From NCBI GenBank assembly GCA_025594325.1, contig JANHCV010000010.1, positions 186,001 to 250,000 on the forward strand: DNA of 64,000 nucleotides, read 5' to 3'. Source of the DNA: Blastocladiella emersonii ATCC 22665 (lineage: Eukaryota > Fungi > Blastocladiomycota). This document shows, piece by piece, positions 37,744-43,463 of this stretch (positions are counted from its first letter, which is position 1; each line of letters starts with the position of its first letter). A model generated the notes under the pieces. It had not been told where the DNA came from. It saw only the letters and a list, made by a program, of their open reading frames with translations, and searched no databases. Position numbers and translations under genes: made by a program.

Positions 37744-39678
37744 TCATTCACTCGACGACGAGGACTGAGCAATGAGCTTGGACCCAATCTCCTGCGCGAC
37801 CTGCGGGTTCGCGCGTCCCTTGGACCGCGCAATGATCTGGCCAACGAGCCACGTCGCGTACTTGGCCTCGGCGATCCCGGCCTTGCGCGGGCTCGCCTTC
37901 ATCGCGGCCTCTGCCCACGCAGTGAGCTGCCCCGGGTCCGAGATGAGCGTCCACCCGTTCGCGTCCGCGATTTCGGGGGCGAGCCGCCGCGCGTCCCCAC
38001 TCGCCAGCATCGCGTCCAGCACCAGCTTGCCCGCCTTGCCCGAGATCACGCCGCGCTCCATGGCCAGCGGGATGCTCGCGAGCTGCGCGGGCGTCACGCC
38101 CCACCCGTGGCACGGGAGGGGTGCGTCGGCCGGGAGTGTGGCGGACTCGCGCAGCTTGGCCACGCGGCCCGTCAGGTCGTTGGCGAGCCACTGGTAGAAG
38201 GTCACGACGTGCGCGGGCGTCGGAGGGCGCATCGCGGCGAGGTACTCGGCGGCGGTCGCGGAGCCGGTCCACGGCTGGTCGTCGTTGTCGTTGGCGGCGG
38301 CGGTGGTGGTCGAGGCGGTCGGCGCGTCGTCGCTGCCAGTGAGCGCGTCGAGGTACCGCTGGCGCTGCACGTCCGGGTCGACGGCGGCCGAGTTCATGGG
38401 GCACACGTCGGTGAGCCACCGGATCTGGCTGGTCGAGAGCGCGGGGAACGCGGCCGCGACGGCGGCGCGGTTCGCAGCGGGGAGGAGCGGGAGCACCGAC
38501 TTGACGCGTTCGACGTCGGCCGGCGCGATGACGAGGCGCGGGAGGTCCGCGTCGGCGACGAACCGGTAATCGCGCGCCGTCTCTTTTGAGCGGAGCGGGA
38601 ACGTCTTCCCCGCGGCCGCGTCGAACCCGCGCGTCGCGCGCGCGCCCGTGTGCCCCGCGGCGAGGAGGGTCGACAGGCGGTCGATCTCGTACTCGAGCGC
38701 CTGCGTCAGGCCCGAGATGGTCGCAATGTTCTTGAGCTCGACGCGCTCCGAGGCGGCGACGCCGTTGATGGCGCGGCGCGCGTCGGTCCATTTGACCGAC
38801 ACGTTCACGTCCATGCGCAGGGAGCCCTCCTCGAGGTTCGCGCTGCACGTTGCGAGTGTGCGGAGGAGCGACTGCAGCGACTTGACGAGGGTCGCTGCCT
38901 CGATGGGCGTGCTATGGTGAAGTGTGAGTGTTCGGCGGAGATGGAGTCTGACATGAAAACGTACGTCATGTCGGGGCGCGTGACAATCTCCATGAGTGCC
39001 ATACCGGCGCGGTTGTAGTCGATGAACGTGGCCCCGTCCTCGTGCATCGACTTGCCCGTGTCCTGCTCGAGCTGGACCTGCTCGATGCCGACGCGGCACG
39101 GCGCGGCGAGGCCGTCAAACTGGTCGAGGACGAGCTCGCCGTTGACCGCAAGTGGGTCTACATGTCACAACCGTCAGTCCACGGTCTCGACGCGACACCA
39201 TCAACAAACGTACGCGTGCGCTGGGTGATCTGGTACCCGGACGGCAGGTCGGCGTAGTAGTAGTGCTTGCGCTCAAACTTGGACCAGGCCGGGATCGTGC
39301 ACCCGAGCGCGATCCCCGTCGCGAGCGCGAGCGCCATGGGCCCGCGCTGCAGCACGGGCAGGCTGCCGGGCAGCGCCACGTCGAACGGCTCCACGGCCGT
39401 GTTCGCCGGGCGGCCAAAGTAGTCGGTCGTCATGGCTACAACGAGGACTGTGAGACTTCGAAGTCGAGAACCTGGCGCACGCGAGGCGTACGCGAGAAGA
39501 GCTTGGTCCGGCTCGCGATCTGCGCGTGGAACTCGAGCCCGATCACCGGCCGCATGCCGTCGGGCAGCTTGCGAGCCTTGGACGCCTTGGTCGCGAGGCC
39601 GCGCAGGCCGCATTGCATCAAGTTTACATGGGTTAGGGCAGAGCCCGTCGGCGCGGCGAGCCGTCGAAGCGCGAGCAT
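37744..39678 (-). CDS. PET112: Mitochondrial glutamyl-tRNA(Gln) amidotransferase subunit B
   Basis: Presequence-like N-terminus; [70 protein letters not shown] and GRANPQ; several introns. Confidence 0.95.
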
Positions 39679-39998
39679 GGTTGTGAGGCGGGAGGACTTG
39701 ACCGCCGCGTGCGCTTGACCCGGCTTTCACCACCGCCGTCTTGTGTCGAGGACGGACCCGATGTCGCCGCCGTGATGCTAGTCCCGATGAGAGCTCGCCC
39801 GAGAGACTACTCGTCCCTTCCCAACAGTAGCCGACGACGTCACGCTCGATGGCGACGCGGAGAGCGCGTCCACGCCGGTCCGGGAGACACTCGCTCGCCC
39901 GCGCGAACGACGCGTCGCGAGCCGAGGTCGGCCGCCGTGAATCCAGAATCGTTGCTGACGCAGAGCACAACCATGACGCAAAGCACACGTAACACACC

Positions 39999-41576
39999 AT
40001 GAACTATCTCACGGCCATCATCGGTATTGTTGTGCCCGCCGAGGCGGCCAGCGCGCCACGGTGACCATCCTCATCAGCTCCTGACCCTCGCCCCTCTCAG
40101 CGTTCCCCATCTTCGTGCCGCTGTTCCTGTTCGAGCTCTTCATCTACGTCCGTGCCACAAGCTCGCGGTACCCAATGACGCTGCACCTGACGCGGGCGTA
40201 CCTGGCCGTCAGCTTCTTCCAGGCCACGTCGGTCGTGTTCTGGCTCGCGGGGTACATTGCCTCGACGCTCGACAGCGTCTACTCGGAGGGGTTCGGGGAC
40301 GGCGAGCGCTGTAACTGCTTTGGGCTCGTCGGTGCGGAAGGTACGCGAGACTAGGCGCGCGGGACGCGGAGCGGAGGAGCGAGCTGACCGTGGCGCAGTC
40401 CTCCTCTCCATCTTTCAGTGGATCATGACGTGCACGACCGCGTGGCAGGCGCTGCTCGTCCGCGGCATCTCGAGCAACAAGATGAGCACGGGCCACGTCT
40501 CGACGCGCAGTGGGTGGTTCAAGGCGTTCTGCGCGTTCTGCGCCGTCATGGCGGGGTACATGGTGCTCTCGTGGGTGACGTACGTGCTGCTGTGCCTCGA
40601 TCATCGCGGAGTAGTGCTTACCGTGCGAGTACTAGGTCGCACAACCGGCGATGCCCGCAGGGAACAAAGTACCTCGAGTGGTTCCAGCACCACCCGTACC
40701 CGGTGTGGCTCATCGTCGACATGGCGCTGTACAGCCTGATCGTGCGCCGGCTGCGCGACCTGCGGCGTGAGGTCGAGGCCAACCTGACCACGATCCACGT
40801 CGAGAGCGCCAACGAGCTCGCTCCACCACCAGCCGCCGAGTCGCCCAGCCTCGCACCCGCATCGCGCGGCATGGTGCAGTCCTCGAGCGGGCACATCACG
40901 CCGCTCGTGATCCCCGCCGTGTCCGTGTCGTCGGGCGGCGTCGCGGCCGTCAAGCGGTCGCTGTCGTCGCTCGCACCGTCGAAACGCAGCAAGCGCAAGG
41001 GTCCGACCGTCAAAGAGGTGCAGCTGCGAAGAACGGTCCGCACCTTCACGTACGCCTTCACCGTCACCATGGTCTCGGGCGTCACGGGCAGCATCTTCTT
41101 TTTCCTGCAGTATATCGTACGTGTTCGCGAGCTCGCTCTGCGTTGAGGGCGCCGCTGACTCTCTCGGCCGCGTGTAGGTCAGCATACCGGCCTTCTCCGT
41201 GATCGCATGCGTGTACTGCCTGTTCATGTACGTCGGGTACATGGCGCGGAGGACGCCCTTCATCATCATCTGGTGCGGCTTCTCGCTCCCGTGCTTGAAC
41301 GGCGTCAACCGGCTTGAGCCCGCCTCGACCATGGCCGCGTCCGTGTCGTCGTTCGAGCTGCCGCGGAGCGGGAGCGCGCTCGCGCACCACGGGCTGCTGA
41401 ACGCGACGTCCCCGGACACGCCGCGCCAGCACCTCATGCAGGGTTCGCCGACGGCGCCGTCGATCGCTGTCGAGGACCTGGGGACCGTGAAGCGGACCAT
41501 GTCGCTCAACGACTCTCCCGCGCAATCGTTCGAGTTCCACACGTCGGTCAGTATGGAACTCGTGGCAGAGAAATAG
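39999..41576 (+). CDS. Putative 7-transmembrane GPCR-like receptor, paralog A (441 aa)
   Basis: Exons 39999-40023, 40101-40340, 40399-40579, 40636-41116, 41178-41576 sum to 1326 nt in frame. Seven hydrophobic segments, a long Ser-rich loop between TM5 and TM6, and a Ser-rich tail. Confidence 0.75.
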
Positions 41577-41931
41577 ATCACGCCTTTTTGTTGCGCACTG
41601 GAGTGGAGATGGGAAGGGATCCGAATCGTCCATTTTTCCGCAAATGTCTCCAACGACGAGCCGGATATCACGTGGGCGGTGCGAGACGCGTCGTGAGACG
41701 CGTTTTTTTCGGCTTCCCGCCGCCGGAACTGGTGAGTAATGGACCAATCCGGCGTCTCACCACGCGTCTCCCGGACGTGCGACACGGTGCACTGCGACGC
41801 GTCGCGCCCCGTCTCGCCGGTTCGCAGCGTCAGTGCGCGCGCAGGGGAGTACAGCCGGGTCCTCGATCTCGTTCATGCTCCCTCCGCATCACGCACATGA
41901 GAGCTGCATAGACTAGCTGAAACTTGTCACC

Positions 41932-43463
41932 ATGAACTACTTGACCGCCATCATCGGTATGCATGGACCGCTGCAGCTGGCCGGGTGCGCGACCGCGATG
42001 CACCGCGCCCAGCCGGCCGGCGACTCCTGATGATCCCCCGTCCCGGACCTGACACGGATGACCGTCGGTAGCGTTCCCCGTCTTCAATATCCTGCTGCTG
42101 TTCGAGCTGTGGATGTTCTGGAAGGCGCCGCCGATAAACAACACGCTCAACCGCGAGCTGTCGCGAGCGTACCTCGCAGTGTCCGTGATCCAGACCGTCT
42201 CGGTGTGGTTCTGGTTCCTCGGGTTCGTCTTCTCCAAGGTCAACAACGTGTTCGGCGAGGGGTTCGCGCCGGGCGAGGAGTGCAACTGCTTCGGGCTCGT
42301 GGGCGCCGAGGGTACGGTCTCCATCGTCGCTCGCTCGCTCACGTCTCGAGTACTGACAGATGATTGCGTGTAGTGGTGCTGTCCATCTACCAGTGGATCA
42401 TGACGTGCTCGACGGCGTGGCAGGCGCTCAGCATCAGCCGCATCTCCATGTCCAAGGACGCGTCGGGCAAGTCGCGGCGCGGCGGGATCTGGTCGCTCGG
42501 GTACTACGTGTTCTGCGGGATCCTCGCGTGTTACACGGGCCTGTGCTGGGTCACGGCGCACAACCGCCGGTGCCCGCAGGGCGAAAAGTACCTGTTCGCC
42601 TTCCAGCACTACTTCTACCCGGTCTTCCTCGTCATCGACATGGTGCTCTACGGACTCACGGCGCGCAAGCTCCTGCAGCTGCGCAAACGGCTCGAGGCCA
42701 GCAACGTGCGGCCCGACGGCGCGGGGAACAAGTCGATGCACATCGGGCTCGCGCCCGCGCCGGGCAACGGGACCAACAACATCCCGCTCAGCGGCAGCAA
42801 CAGCCAGATCTCGTCATCCAACGGCGAGACGGGGAACTCGACGCCCGCGCTCCCGTCGGCGCAGTCCGGGTCCATGTCGGCCACCAACTCGCTCTCGGTC
42901 AAGAACGTCATGACACCGTCGCAGGGCCCGCGCAAGTCCCAGGCCGTCCGCAACATGCGCGAGACGGTCCGCACCTACACGCTCGCGTTCACGGTGACAC
43001 TCGTCACGGGGCTGATTGGCGTCGCCGTGTTCTTCCTCCAGTTTGTGGTACGTCGCGTCCGCGGTTCGCGGCCGTGGTGGAGGTGATCCGTCGCTGACCG
43101 TGGCCATCGACCTCGCGTGTAGGCCAACATCCCGCAGTTCAGCCTGATCGCGTGCATCTACTGCCTGCTCATGTACATTGGTACGCACTTTTTTCTCGTC
43201 GCACCGATGGCCACCGCCTCTCACCCTCTCCTCCCTTTGTAGGCTACGTGGCGCGCCGGACGCCGTTCCTGATCATGTGGTGCAAGTACGACCTGCCGCC
43301 GTGGATGCGCCGGCGGAACACGATCCTGGTCGCGGCGCCGCCGGGCAGCAGCAACAACACGTCGGCCATGCCGCTCAAGGGCAACGGGTCGACGCTCATG
43401 CTCAGCGTGCCAACAGCCAGCGCGGCCATTTCGCGGTCGTCGTCCAACCTGTCGCCGGCGTAG
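41932..43463 (+). CDS. Putative 7-transmembrane GPCR-like receptor, paralog B (405 aa)
   Basis: Exons 41932-41956, 42072-42311, 42374-43047, 43123-43180, 43243-43463 sum to 1218 nt. Shares MNYLTAII/AFP, ECNCFGLVGAE, QWIMTCxTAWQAL, HNRRCPQG and ARRTPF with paralog A. Confidence 0.75.

What the first reader, a model, noticed from the sequence alone, without database searches (positions are those of the whole stretch)
39999..43463. Tandem pair of unclassified 7TM GPCR-like receptors
Seen: after splicing, both proteins have seven hydrophobic helices and almost no N-terminal ectodomain. A Cys pair (CNC) precedes TM3 and another Cys lies in the TM4-TM5 loop (HNRRCPQG). The TM5-TM6 loop is long and Ser/Thr-rich, and the tail is Ser-rich. 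TM regions are conserved between paralogs while loop 3 and tail diverge. TM7 has no Lys, so these are not opsins. Known: a TM3-ECL2 disulfide and long ICL3 are GPCR hallmarks. I cannot place them in Ste2, Ste3, Git3, cAMP-receptor or PTH11 classes. Inference: a lineage-specific chemoreceptor family, possibly for zoospore or gamete chemotaxis.
Basis: partly seen in the sequence, partly recalled or inferred. Interest (0 to 1): 0.75.

Follow-up and report, generated by a model that had tools for sequence, protein, structure and literature searches.

The report
Unnamed GPCR-fold receptor gene pair
Two neighbouring genes of the swimming-spore fungus Blastocladiella emersonii encode seven-helix membrane proteins of a small, unnamed family that folds like G-protein-coupled receptors, also occurs in other early fungi and water moulds, and is fused to a G-protein alpha subunit in one environmental sequence.

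Summary
Window 39999-43463 carries two spliced genes, g1 (441 aa) and g2 (405 aa), five exons each with GT..AG introns. Each has seven hydrophobic helices, an 8-residue N-terminus, a Cys at the top of TM3, a Cys in the TM4-TM5 loop, and no Lys in TM7. The helices are conserved between the copies; loop 3 and the tail are not.

- "Unclassified" holds: no Pfam or NCBIfam model hits the exons or 23 full-length relatives.
- "GPCR-like" holds at the fold level: AlphaFold models give seven confident helices, and all 50 best structural matches are GPCR-fold proteins, with no class standing out.
- "Lineage-specific" is wrong: relatives occur in Allomyces, Paraphysoderma, Chytriomyces, Thamnocephalis, Lagenidium, Pythium and about 15 environmental sequences.
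- The genome holds exactly two copies, so this is not an expanded chemoreceptor repertoire.

One environmental member is a single open reading frame that joins this 7TM domain to a G-protein alpha subunit. That supports G-protein coupling, but it rests on one contig.

GenBank's model H9P43_007557 wrongly fuses the two genes and mis-splices one intron.

The ligand and the cellular role are unknown, and a zoospore chemotaxis role is untested. The joined spliced models were never given to a search or folding tool.

The parts
39999..40023 (+). g1 exon 1 (MNYLTAII + 1 nt)
   Evidence: The ATG and the N-terminal motif MNYLTAI are shared by almost all family members.
40101..40340 (+). g1 exon 2: TM1 (rest), TM2, ECL1, start of TM3 with CNC and GLVGAE
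   Evidence: The own-genome profile search gives E 1.3e-23.
40399..40579 (+). g1 exon 3: TM3-TM4
   Evidence: Profile hit E 3.5e-6.
40580..40635 (+). g1 intron 3 (56 nt, GT..AG), absent from g2. GenBank's model splices differently here.
   Evidence: Only this splice restores the invariant SHNRRCPQG. P0001 reads YVLLCLDHRG at this point.
40636..41116 (+). g1 exon 4: ECL2 (NRRCPQ), TM5, long loop 3, TM6
   Evidence: Profile hit E 8.2e-18.
41178..41576 (+). g1 exon 5: TM7, cytoplasmic tail and TAG stop
   Evidence: Profile hit E 5.8e-10.
41577..41931 (.). 355-bp spacer between the two genes. GenBank's fused model treats it as part of an intron.
   Evidence: It lies between the in-frame stop of g1 and the ATG of g2.
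41932..41956 (+). g2 exon 1 (MNYLTAII + 1 nt), with the same intron position and phase as g1
42072..42311 (+). g2 exon 2: TM1 (rest), TM2, ECL1, start of TM3
   Evidence: Profile hit E 3.3e-27.
42374..43047 (+). g2 exon 3: TM3-TM6, including ECL2 and loop 3
   Evidence: Profile hit E 3.9e-36. This exon was the query.
43123..43180 (+). g2 exon 4 (58 nt): ECL3 and most of TM7
   Evidence: The junctions are confirmed by P0019 and P0031, which read across them.
43181..43242 (+). g2 intron 4 (62 nt), absent from g1
43243..43463 (+). g2 exon 5: end of TM7 (GYVARRTPF), tail and TAG stop

Best explanation
The stretch holds two separate, tandemly duplicated genes. Each encodes a stand-alone seven-helix membrane protein of a small, conserved, so far unnamed eukaryotic family.

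Family motifs:
- MNYLTAI at the N-terminus.
- SE..GE..NC-GLVGAE running into TM3.
- NRRCPQ in the TM4-TM5 loop.
- QH.FYP....D in TM5.
- LQF at the top of TM6.
- AC.FC..MY..Y..RR in TM7.

Shown: the proteins adopt the GPCR fold with the N-terminus outside and the tail inside.

Inferred:
- A disulfide between the TM3-top Cys and the ECL2 Cys staples a rigid, invariant outer cap.
- This cap sits over a pocket lined, one to two helical turns down, by invariant polar residues. In g2 numbering these are Glu88 in TM3 (seven residues after the Cys, the position of the amine-binding Asp in aminergic receptors), Asp177 in TM5, Ser52 in TM2 and Gln311 in TM6.
- The pocket is nearly identical from fungi to oomycetes, so the ligand is probably one conserved small, possibly cationic, molecule or ion rather than a lineage-specific cue.
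- Activation is passed to a heterotrimeric G-protein alpha subunit through the basic cytoplasmic ends of TM5, TM6 and TM7.
- The variable, mildly Ser/Thr-rich loop 3 and tail are regulatory.

In B. emersonii, g2 is the conservative copy and g1 the fast-evolving one.
For: Gene models and separateness.

Family membership:
- A profile of the exons finds 19 proteins, 13 of them at E <= 1e-10.
- g1 keeps 46 and g2 keeps 47 of the 52 columns that are at least 90% conserved in 20 other members.

Fold:
- AF2 of homologue P0005 gives seven helices with pLDDT about 90.
- The g2 half of P0001 gives pLDDT 82-95.
- Foldseek top hits are GPCRs for both models.

Topology: about 27 K/R inside against 4 outside.

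G-protein link:
- P0030 is one uninterrupted ORF of 674 aa on a 2282-bp contig with both UTRs.
- Residues 1-~325 are this family (E 9.6e-94).
- Residues 335-663 are G-alpha PF00503 (130.9 bits) with the P-loop, DxxGQ, NKxD and TCATD motifs kept. This part aligns to Gi/Gt from just after the N-terminal helix to the C-terminus.
- The two halves have the same composition: GC3 0.89 and 0.91, RSCU r 0.83.
- The junction carries no long repeat.
- B. emersonii itself has about ten G-alpha loci.

Duplication: g1, g2 and Allomyces form a clade at 98/98. The end branch of g1 is 1.06 against 0.30 for g2.
Against: - The G-alpha fusion is seen in one contig of one sample only.
- Its closest relatives are not fused: L007 (59% identical) ends in a stop 24 residues after TM7, and P0027 is also unfused. 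An assembly chimera is not fully excluded, and one fusion does not prove coupling in fungi.
- The family lacks the class A switches: there is no DRY and no NPxxY.
- The structural matches are weak in Foldseek terms (E 5e-3 and worse).
- The pocket and disulfide geometry were read from sequence depth in the helices, not from coordinates.
- A language-model feature search puts a full-length member nearest to THH1/TOM1/TOM3 and GPR137 clusters (0.94). To my knowledge these are endomembrane proteins not known to act through heterotrimeric G proteins.
Confidence: 0.58

Rival explanations
1. The family is a divergent branch of the THH1/TOM1/TOM3-GPR137 group: GPCR-fold proteins of vacuole or lysosome membranes. 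These act as scaffolds or regulators for small GTPases (ARL8 for TOM1, Rag for GPR137) rather than as cell-surface receptors. On this reading the pair would have a housekeeping or nutrient-signalling role.
For: - ESM Atlas feature search with full-length member P0008: the best clusters are THH1/TOM1/TOM3 (0.94, 186 of 256 shared features), GPR137_N and PRRT3. Nine of the ten best hits with a family share a family or clan.
- No canonical PF06454 gene is found in the B. emersonii genome, so this family could fill that place.
- One or two copies per genome and strong conservation suit a housekeeping role.
- Like this family, GPR137 has no domains outside the 7TM, and it is inferred to date from stem eukaryotes (bioRxiv 10.1101/2025.04.15.649019).
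Against: - PF06454 hits none of 23 members even at E <= 10.
- The Atlas search gives no alignment or E-value and is only a lead.
- The exon-only query pointed instead to Dicty_CAR and 7tm families, at a low score of 0.86.
- The G-alpha fusion points to heterotrimeric G-protein signalling.
- A conserved ECL1-ECL2 cap with paired Cys suggests a ligand-facing outer side.
Confidence: 0.25
2. The proteins are GPCR-fold ion channels, transporters or membrane enzymes. The conserved buried Glu, Asp and Gln would form a conduction or catalytic path, as in TMEM87A-type or rhodopsin-type 7TM proteins that do not signal through G proteins.
For: - Light-driven pumps appear among the Foldseek hits.
- Several invariant acidic or polar residues lie inside helices.
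Against: - TMEM87A is tied with dozens of receptors, all within 1 Z unit.
- There is no GOLD domain and no TM7 Lys for retinal.
- No transporter, channel or enzyme Pfam family is shared by more than two of the 23 members. MgtE matches two at E 0.052 or weaker, and the rest match one each.
- The G-alpha fusion argues for signalling.
Confidence: 0.1
3. The proteins are light sensors (opsins), as the UniRef name 'Opsin' for the Lagenidium member suggests.
For: - UniRef's automatic name for P0007.
- B. emersonii zoospores are phototactic (PMC9730499).
- Microbial rhodopsins appear among the weak Foldseek hits.
Against: - No member has a Lys in TM7, so no retinal Schiff base is possible there.
- No Bac_rhodopsin or 7tm_1 Pfam hit.
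- Phototaxis in this fungus is already assigned to BeGC1.
Confidence: 0.02

Closest known systems
Class A (rhodopsin-like) GPCRs, e.g. GPR35, P2Y, PAF and prostanoid receptors
   Same: - N-out, C-in topology.
- A Cys at the top of TM3 and a Cys in ECL2.
- An acidic residue seven positions after the TM3 Cys.
- A Trp in TM4 and a Pro in TM5.
- A long loop 3 and a cytoplasmic tail.
   Different: - No 7tm_1 HMM hit at E <= 10.
- No DRY, CWxP or NPxxY motif.
- Only 5-12% identity in the structural alignments.
- ECL3 is four residues long.
- The N-terminus is eight residues long.
THH1/TOM1/TOM3 (PF06454) and GPR137 7TM proteins
   Same: - A stand-alone 7TM of similar size with no extra domains.
- Nearest clusters in language-model feature space (0.94).
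- Wide but patchy eukaryotic distribution.
   Different: - No HMM match.
- The relationship could not be tested by profile-profile or structure comparison here.
- As far as I know, those proteins sit on vacuole or lysosome membranes and work with small GTPases.
TMEM87A and the GOST family (Lung_7-TM_R)
   Different: - The GOST proteins have a large luminal GOLD domain before the 7TM, while this family has eight residues.
- No PF06814 hit.
- The score is tied with many receptors.
Oomycete 'GPCR-bigrams' (GPCR fused to PIPK, INPP, adenylyl cyclase, PDE, TKL or aspartic protease)
   Same: Environmental member P0030 is likewise a 7TM domain with a C-terminal signalling domain in a single protein.
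   Different: - The partner domain is a G-protein alpha subunit, which is not among the six bigram types listed in PMC5784254.
- The two B. emersonii genes carry no extra domain.
Fungal GPCR classes (Ste2, Ste3, Git3, Stm1-like, cAMP-receptor-like, PTH11 and others; 17 classes in PMC12842992)
   Different: None of the corresponding Pfam models hits. The only trace is GPR_Gpa2_C at E 0.047 in 1 of 23 members, over the wrong helices.

Membership tests
Unnamed 'MNYLTAI / NRRCPQ' 7TM family (defined here from 20+ sequences) | Significant profile match to the family | tested here: met
   A profile of the exons recovers members at E 1.6e-48 to 1e-10. The family profile finds all exons of g1 and g2 in the genome and nothing else.
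Unnamed 'MNYLTAI / NRRCPQ' 7TM family (defined here from 20+ sequences) | Conserved motifs: MNYLTAI, NC.GLVGAE, NRRCPQ, QH.FYP....D, LQF, AC..C..MY..Y..RR | tested here: met
   g1 keeps 46 and g2 keeps 47 of the 52 columns that are at least 90% conserved in 20 other members.
GPCR fold (structural superfamily) | Seven-helix bundle superposable on solved GPCRs over all helices | tested here: met
   [not shown]
GPCR fold (structural superfamily) | N-terminus outside, C-terminus inside | tested here: met
   Positive-inside count in g2: about 27 K/R on cytoplasmic loops and helix ends against 4 outside. No dedicated topology predictor was available.
G-protein-coupled receptor (functional sense) | Activates or binds a heterotrimeric G protein | not testable with these tools
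   Indirect only: one natural fusion of a family member to G-alpha, and G-alpha genes present in the genome.
Class A rhodopsin-like GPCR (PF00001) | 7tm_1 HMM match; DRY at the end of TM3; NPxxY in TM7 | tested here: not met
   No hit at E <= 10 in the exons or in 23 members. The TM3 end reads AWQALLVRG in g1 and AWQALSISR in g2, and TM7 reads C.YCL.MY.GY.
Opsins (type I or type II) | Retinal-binding Lys in TM7 | tested here: not met
   There is no Lys in TM7 of g1, g2 or any aligned member.
cAMP-receptor-like (Dicty_CAR), Git3/GPR_Gpa2_C, Ste2, Ste3, Frizzled, 7tm_2, 7tm_3 | Match to the family's Pfam model | tested here: not met
   No hits. The only trace is GPR_Gpa2_C at E 0.047 in one member, below its cut-off and over TM4-5.
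THH1/TOM1/TOM3 - GPR137 | Match to PF06454 (PF27607 is not in the local library) | tested here: not met
   No PF06454 hit in 23 members at E <= 10 or in the genome. PF27607 was unavailable.
THH1/TOM1/TOM3 - GPR137 | Remote homology by profile-profile or structure comparison | not testable with these tools
   No TOM1 or GPR137 sequence or structure could be brought in by reference. The only evidence is the Atlas feature score of 0.94.
GOST / TMEM87 (Lung_7-TM_R) | N-terminal GOLD domain and a PF06814 match | tested here: not met
   The N-terminus is 8 residues and there is no Pfam hit.

The most novel reading that the evidence does not exclude
This is a previously unrecognised class of eukaryotic G-protein-coupled receptor. 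On this reading it is either old enough to be shared by fungi and stramenopiles or has moved between them. Its conserved acidic pocket would sense one common small molecule or ion, and in at least one protist it is hard-wired to its own G-alpha subunit as a natural receptor-G-protein fusion. In Blastocladiomycota it could then be a candidate for one of the long-sought zoospore or gamete attractant receptors.
Probability: 0.3. Interest if true: 0.75.

Novelty: new variant of a known kind. Interest (0 to 1): 0.55.

Why it matters
- Fungal GPCR catalogues work from known HMMs, for example the 17 classes of PMC12842992 and the 54 PF00001-type genes reported for this genome in PMC9730499. They would therefore miss this family, which GenBank lists only as 'hypothetical protein'.
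- The family is compact, strongly conserved and shared by zoosporic fungi and animal-pathogenic oomycetes (Pythium insidiosum, Lagenidium giganteum). It is a clean target for de-orphanisation.
- If the natural 7TM-G-alpha fusion is real, it would be direct evolutionary evidence of coupling and a rare architecture.
- The finding also corrects a public gene model: two genes have been fused into one 829-aa protein.

Tried and rejected
- Pfam and NCBIfam on every exon found nothing.
- The word-index protein search with the largest g2 ORF found nothing. The public model of these genes is an 829-aa fusion and falls outside that tool's length window, so the blank was an artefact.
- A family-profile search against PDB sequences gave only a chance hit, a light-harvesting protein at E 0.28.
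- Pfam at E <= 10 on 23 members showed no consistent family.
- PF06454 is absent from the own genome. PF27607 is not in the library.
- The metagenome scan for further G-alpha fusions returned four loci, none fused where the end could be read.
- Literature searches for this family or for natural 7TM-G-alpha fusions found nothing relevant. One query timed out.
- The supplementary GPCR table of the genome paper is not held.
- GenBank's single 14-helix fused model is rejected. g1 ends in an in-frame stop. g2 has its own ATG and the family's N-terminal motif. Every homologue is a single 7TM. A direct 7+7 fusion would also put the second module in the membrane upside down.
- The 'expanded chemoreceptor family' reading is rejected, because there are exactly two copies.
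- Kinship with the four-gene 7TM array noted elsewhere in this genome (s1-276114) is rejected, because the family profile finds no match there.
- The joined spliced proteins were built only inside local scripts, for hydropathy, pairwise alignment, conservation and the tree. They were not given to any search or folding tool. Full-length searches and folds used database proteins by id.
Full report
WHAT IS THERE. The window is GC-rich eukaryotic DNA. The stretch 39999-43463 reads as two head-to-tail genes on the + strand.

I built spliced models in a local script.
- g1 has exons 39999-40023, 40101-40340, 40399-40579, 40636-41116 and 41178-41576, giving 441 aa.
- g2 has exons 41932-41956, 42072-42311, 42374-43047, 43123-43180 and 43243-43463, giving 405 aa.
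- All eight introns are short (56-115 nt) and GT..AG.
- Both genes begin with the same 25-nt first exon encoding MNYLTAII.
- g1 has an intron (40580-40635) that g2 lacks, and g2 has one (43181-43242) that g1 lacks.

They were used only in local scripts for hydropathy, alignment, conservation and a tree. Searches were made exon by exon by reference, or with database proteins by id.

CHECK OF THE OBSERVATION.
- Each protein has seven hydrophobic segments.
- The N-terminus is eight residues long.
- CNC lies at residues 79-81 just before TM3, and HNRRCPQG lies in the TM4-TM5 loop.
- The TM5-TM6 loop is about 75-95 residues long.
- TM7 has no Lys.
- Paralog identity is 54% (TM1-5) and 61% (TM6-7), against 25% in loop 3 and 33% in the tail.
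- The loop and tail are only mildly enriched in Ser/Thr: 20-23% against 16-18% overall.
- K/R residues lie about 27 to 4 on the side predicted to be cytoplasmic, which fits N-out, C-in.

ORGANISM AND PUBLIC ANNOTATION. A profile of the g2 exon 3 aligned with the matching g1 exons (A1) was searched with HMMER against 1.84 billion representatives. The top hit, P0001, is KAI9168185.1, 'hypothetical protein H9P43_007557 [Blastocladiella emersonii ATCC 22665]'. The genome has 21 contigs, as in the published assembly.

P0001 is an 829-aa model that fuses both genes.
- It skips the g1 stop, the 355-bp spacer and the first exon of g2.
- In g1 it reads YVLLCLDHRG where my splice gives the family-invariant SHNRRCPQG.
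- All homologues are single 7TM proteins that start with MNYLTAI.
- Fragment P0019 and Allomyces P0031 read straight across the g2 exon 3/4/5 junctions.
- A direct 7+7 fusion would also invert the second module in the membrane.

I therefore take the two-gene model as correct. The fused public model also explains why the first word-index search found nothing: its length filter excluded an 829-aa protein.

THE FAMILY. No Pfam or NCBIfam model hits any exon. No Pfam model is shared among 23 full-length relatives even at E <= 10, and a family profile finds nothing in PDB sequences. Yet relatives exist.
- Blastocladiomycota: Allomyces javanicus, A. macrogynus and Paraphysoderma sedebokerense.
- Chytridiomycota: Chytriomyces cf. 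hyalinus and Chytriomyces sp. MP71.
- Zoopagomycota: Thamnocephalis sphaerospora.
- Oomycetes: Lagenidium giganteum and Pythium insidiosum.
- About 15 environmental sequences from JGI, ENA and Logan.

All named ones are 'hypothetical', apart from UniRef's automatic 'Opsin' for the Lagenidium protein.

The alignment (A2, A4) shows sharp motifs.
- MNYLTAI at the start, and a Glu near the inner end of TM1.
- S..Q..S..FW..G in TM2.
- SE..GE..NC.GLVGAE..L...Q running from ECL1 into TM3.
- Y......TA.NRRCPQ from TM4 into ECL2.
- QH.FYP.....D in TM5.
- F..Q at the top of TM6.
- AC.FC..MY..YA.RR in TM7.

Of 52 columns that are at least 90% conserved in 20 other members, g1 keeps 46 and g2 keeps 47. The first is specific to Blastocladiella and Allomyces among the sequences aligned.

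The family profile finds only the exons of g1 and g2 in the 32.65-Mb genome (single-sequence search). The genome therefore holds exactly two copies.

In a maximum-likelihood tree of 26 rows, g1, g2 and the two Allomyces proteins form a clade (98/98). I left out fragments P0014, P0017, P0018-like short pieces, P0019-21, P0028 and P0029, and cut P0030 to its 7TM part. g1 and g2 are weakly sisters (81/54), and g1 sits on a branch of 1.06 against 0.30 for g2. Paraphysoderma and Thamnocephalis come next. The duplication is thus probably recent and local, with g1 the fast-evolving copy.

FOLD. AlphaFold2 on homologue P0005 with the 16-sequence alignment gave seven long helices with pLDDT about 90 in the membrane part. 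The window's own product, taken as GenBank's P0001 with a 23-sequence alignment, gave seven helices with pLDDT 82-95 for the g2 half. The g1 half received no alignment depth and is low-confidence, though still seven helices.

Foldseek against the PDB gave only weak E-values (5e-3 and worse).
- The top matches for both models are GPCRs of classes A, B, C, F and adhesion.
- The P0005 model also matched some microbial rhodopsins and TMEM87A.

LINK TO G PROTEINS. The last word-index search, with profile A4, brought up P0030.
- It is a 674-aa protein from a 2282-bp Logan contig (DRR659542) with both UTRs and one uninterrupted ORF.
- Residues 1 to about 325 are a full member of this family (E 9.6e-94).
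- Residues 335-663 match Pfam G-alpha at 130.9 bits, against a cut-off of 48.8.
- This part aligns to Gi and Gt structures from just after the N-terminal helix to the C-terminal helix.
- The P-loop (GTACTGKTT), DAPGQ, NKVD and TCATD motifs are kept.
- The two halves have the same composition: GC3 0.89 and 0.91, codon-usage correlation 0.83.
- The junction DNA has no long repeat that would invite mis-assembly.

This is a 'Rosetta stone' argument that the family works with G-alpha. Its limits are clear.
- It rests on one contig in one sample.
- Its nearest relative in the JGI metagenomes (L007, 59% identical) ends in a stop 24 residues after TM7.
- Its sister P0027 is also unfused.

B. emersonii has about ten G-alpha loci, none near this window.

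HOW IT PROBABLY WORKS. These points are inference. With the TM3-top Cys as reference, the invariant Glu (Glu88 in g2) lies seven residues down TM3, the position of the ligand-binding Asp of aminergic receptors.
- At about the same depth lie Asp177 (TM5), Ser52 (TM2), Thr149 (TM4), Cys324 (TM7) and Gln311 (TM6).
- A second polar layer sits mid-membrane: Gln49 in TM2, Gln95 in TM3, Tyr142 in TM4 and Met330/Tyr331 in TM7. This is where class A receptors have their hydrophilic core (helix limits, residues).
- The outer loops ECL1 and ECL2 are themselves nearly invariant and carry the paired Cys.

I could not read model coordinates, so the disulfide and the pocket are not verified in three dimensions.

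A pocket this conserved from fungi to oomycetes, with one or two gene copies per genome, points to one common small, possibly cationic, ligand or ion. It does not look like a diversifying chemoreceptor repertoire.

RIVALS. The main rival is kinship with the THH1/TOM1/TOM3-GPR137 group of endomembrane 7TM proteins.
- For it: the ESM Atlas feature search with full-length P0008 put those clusters first (0.94, 186 shared features), and the genome lacks a canonical PF06454 gene.
- Against it: no HMM match, and the exon-only Atlas query pointed elsewhere at a low score.
- I had no way to bring TOM1 or GPR137 sequences in by reference for a profile-profile test.

A channel, transporter or enzyme role of a GPCR-fold protein, and an opsin role, are less likely. 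The opsin reading fails on the missing TM7 Lys.

COMPARISON WITH THE LITERATURE.
- The genome paper reports 54 PF00001-type GPCR genes plus 'other GPCRs' found by domain searches (PMC9730499). Its table is not held. A family without a Pfam domain, and fused in the annotation, would not be in such a list.
- The 17-class fungal GPCR scheme (PMC12842992) and the oomycete GPCR-bigram survey, with its six fusion types and no G-alpha (PMC5784254), do not describe it.
- The choanoflagellate GPCR survey names new orphan 7TM families (RSF, GPRch1-3), but its RSF has an extra helix with an NxLQxxMN motif between TM6 and TM7. Here that loop is four residues.
- I found no paper on this family. The library is not exhaustive.

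CONTEXT. Upstream on the minus strand lies a GatB-type amidotransferase gene. Downstream lie a Pro-rich ORF without a domain and a PPR protein. Nothing suggests a functional cluster.

VERDICT. The family is not lineage-specific and not expanded, and the chemotaxis role is untested. I rate it a new variant of a known kind, a new GPCR-fold family with a possible natural G-alpha fusion, of moderate interest.

Noticed in passing
window 39999-43463 (GenBank KAI9168185.1 / H9P43_007557 = P0001): The public gene model fuses the two genes into one 829-aa protein. It skips the g1 stop and the first exon of g2. It also mis-splices g1 around 40580-40635, which destroys the invariant NRRCPQ motif.
   Followed up: yes
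L006 (Logan DRR659542 contig, ORF 45-2069): This is a single ORF that joins a member of this 7TM family to a heterotrimeric-type G-alpha lacking its N-terminal helix. It was seen once. The closest relatives, L007 and P0027, are not fused.
   Followed up: partly
window 40580-40635 and 43181-43242: Intron presence is reciprocal between the paralogs. g1 has an intron in ECL2 that g2 lacks, and g2 has one inside TM7 that g1 lacks. The other three intron positions are shared.
   Followed up: partly
tree (P0015, P0032 with P0007, P0024, P0022): The two Chytriomyces proteins group with the oomycete proteins (Lagenidium, Pythium) at 100/99 support rather than with the other fungi. This could be an old paralogy or a transfer between zoosporic fungi and oomycetes.
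   Followed up: no
P0002 (Allomyces javanicus KAJ3355268.1): This public model lacks the short exon that encodes most of TM7 (it reads ..VQF|LYLGYVARR..). The A. macrogynus orthologue P0031 has it. This is probably another annotation error caused by the 58-nt exon.
   Followed up: partly
window 39909, 41685, 41796 (also 42457): The palindrome GACGCGTC occurs upstream of both genes: once before g1 and twice in the spacer before g2. Over the whole window it occurs 14 times against 6.5 expected, and 1 of 100 shuffles reached 14. This is weak evidence and could simply reflect base composition.
   Followed up: partly
window 37744-40000, minus strand: A GatB/GatE-type (Glu-tRNA-Gln amidotransferase B) gene lies in at least two exons directly upstream of g1. 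Its 5' end abuts the g1 start codon region.
   Followed up: no
L004 (ENA ERZ26167977 contig, 349,877 bp): Environmental family member P0026 lies about 2.6 kb downstream of a CHASE-HisKA-HATPase_c-Response_reg hybrid histidine kinase gene.
   Followed up: no
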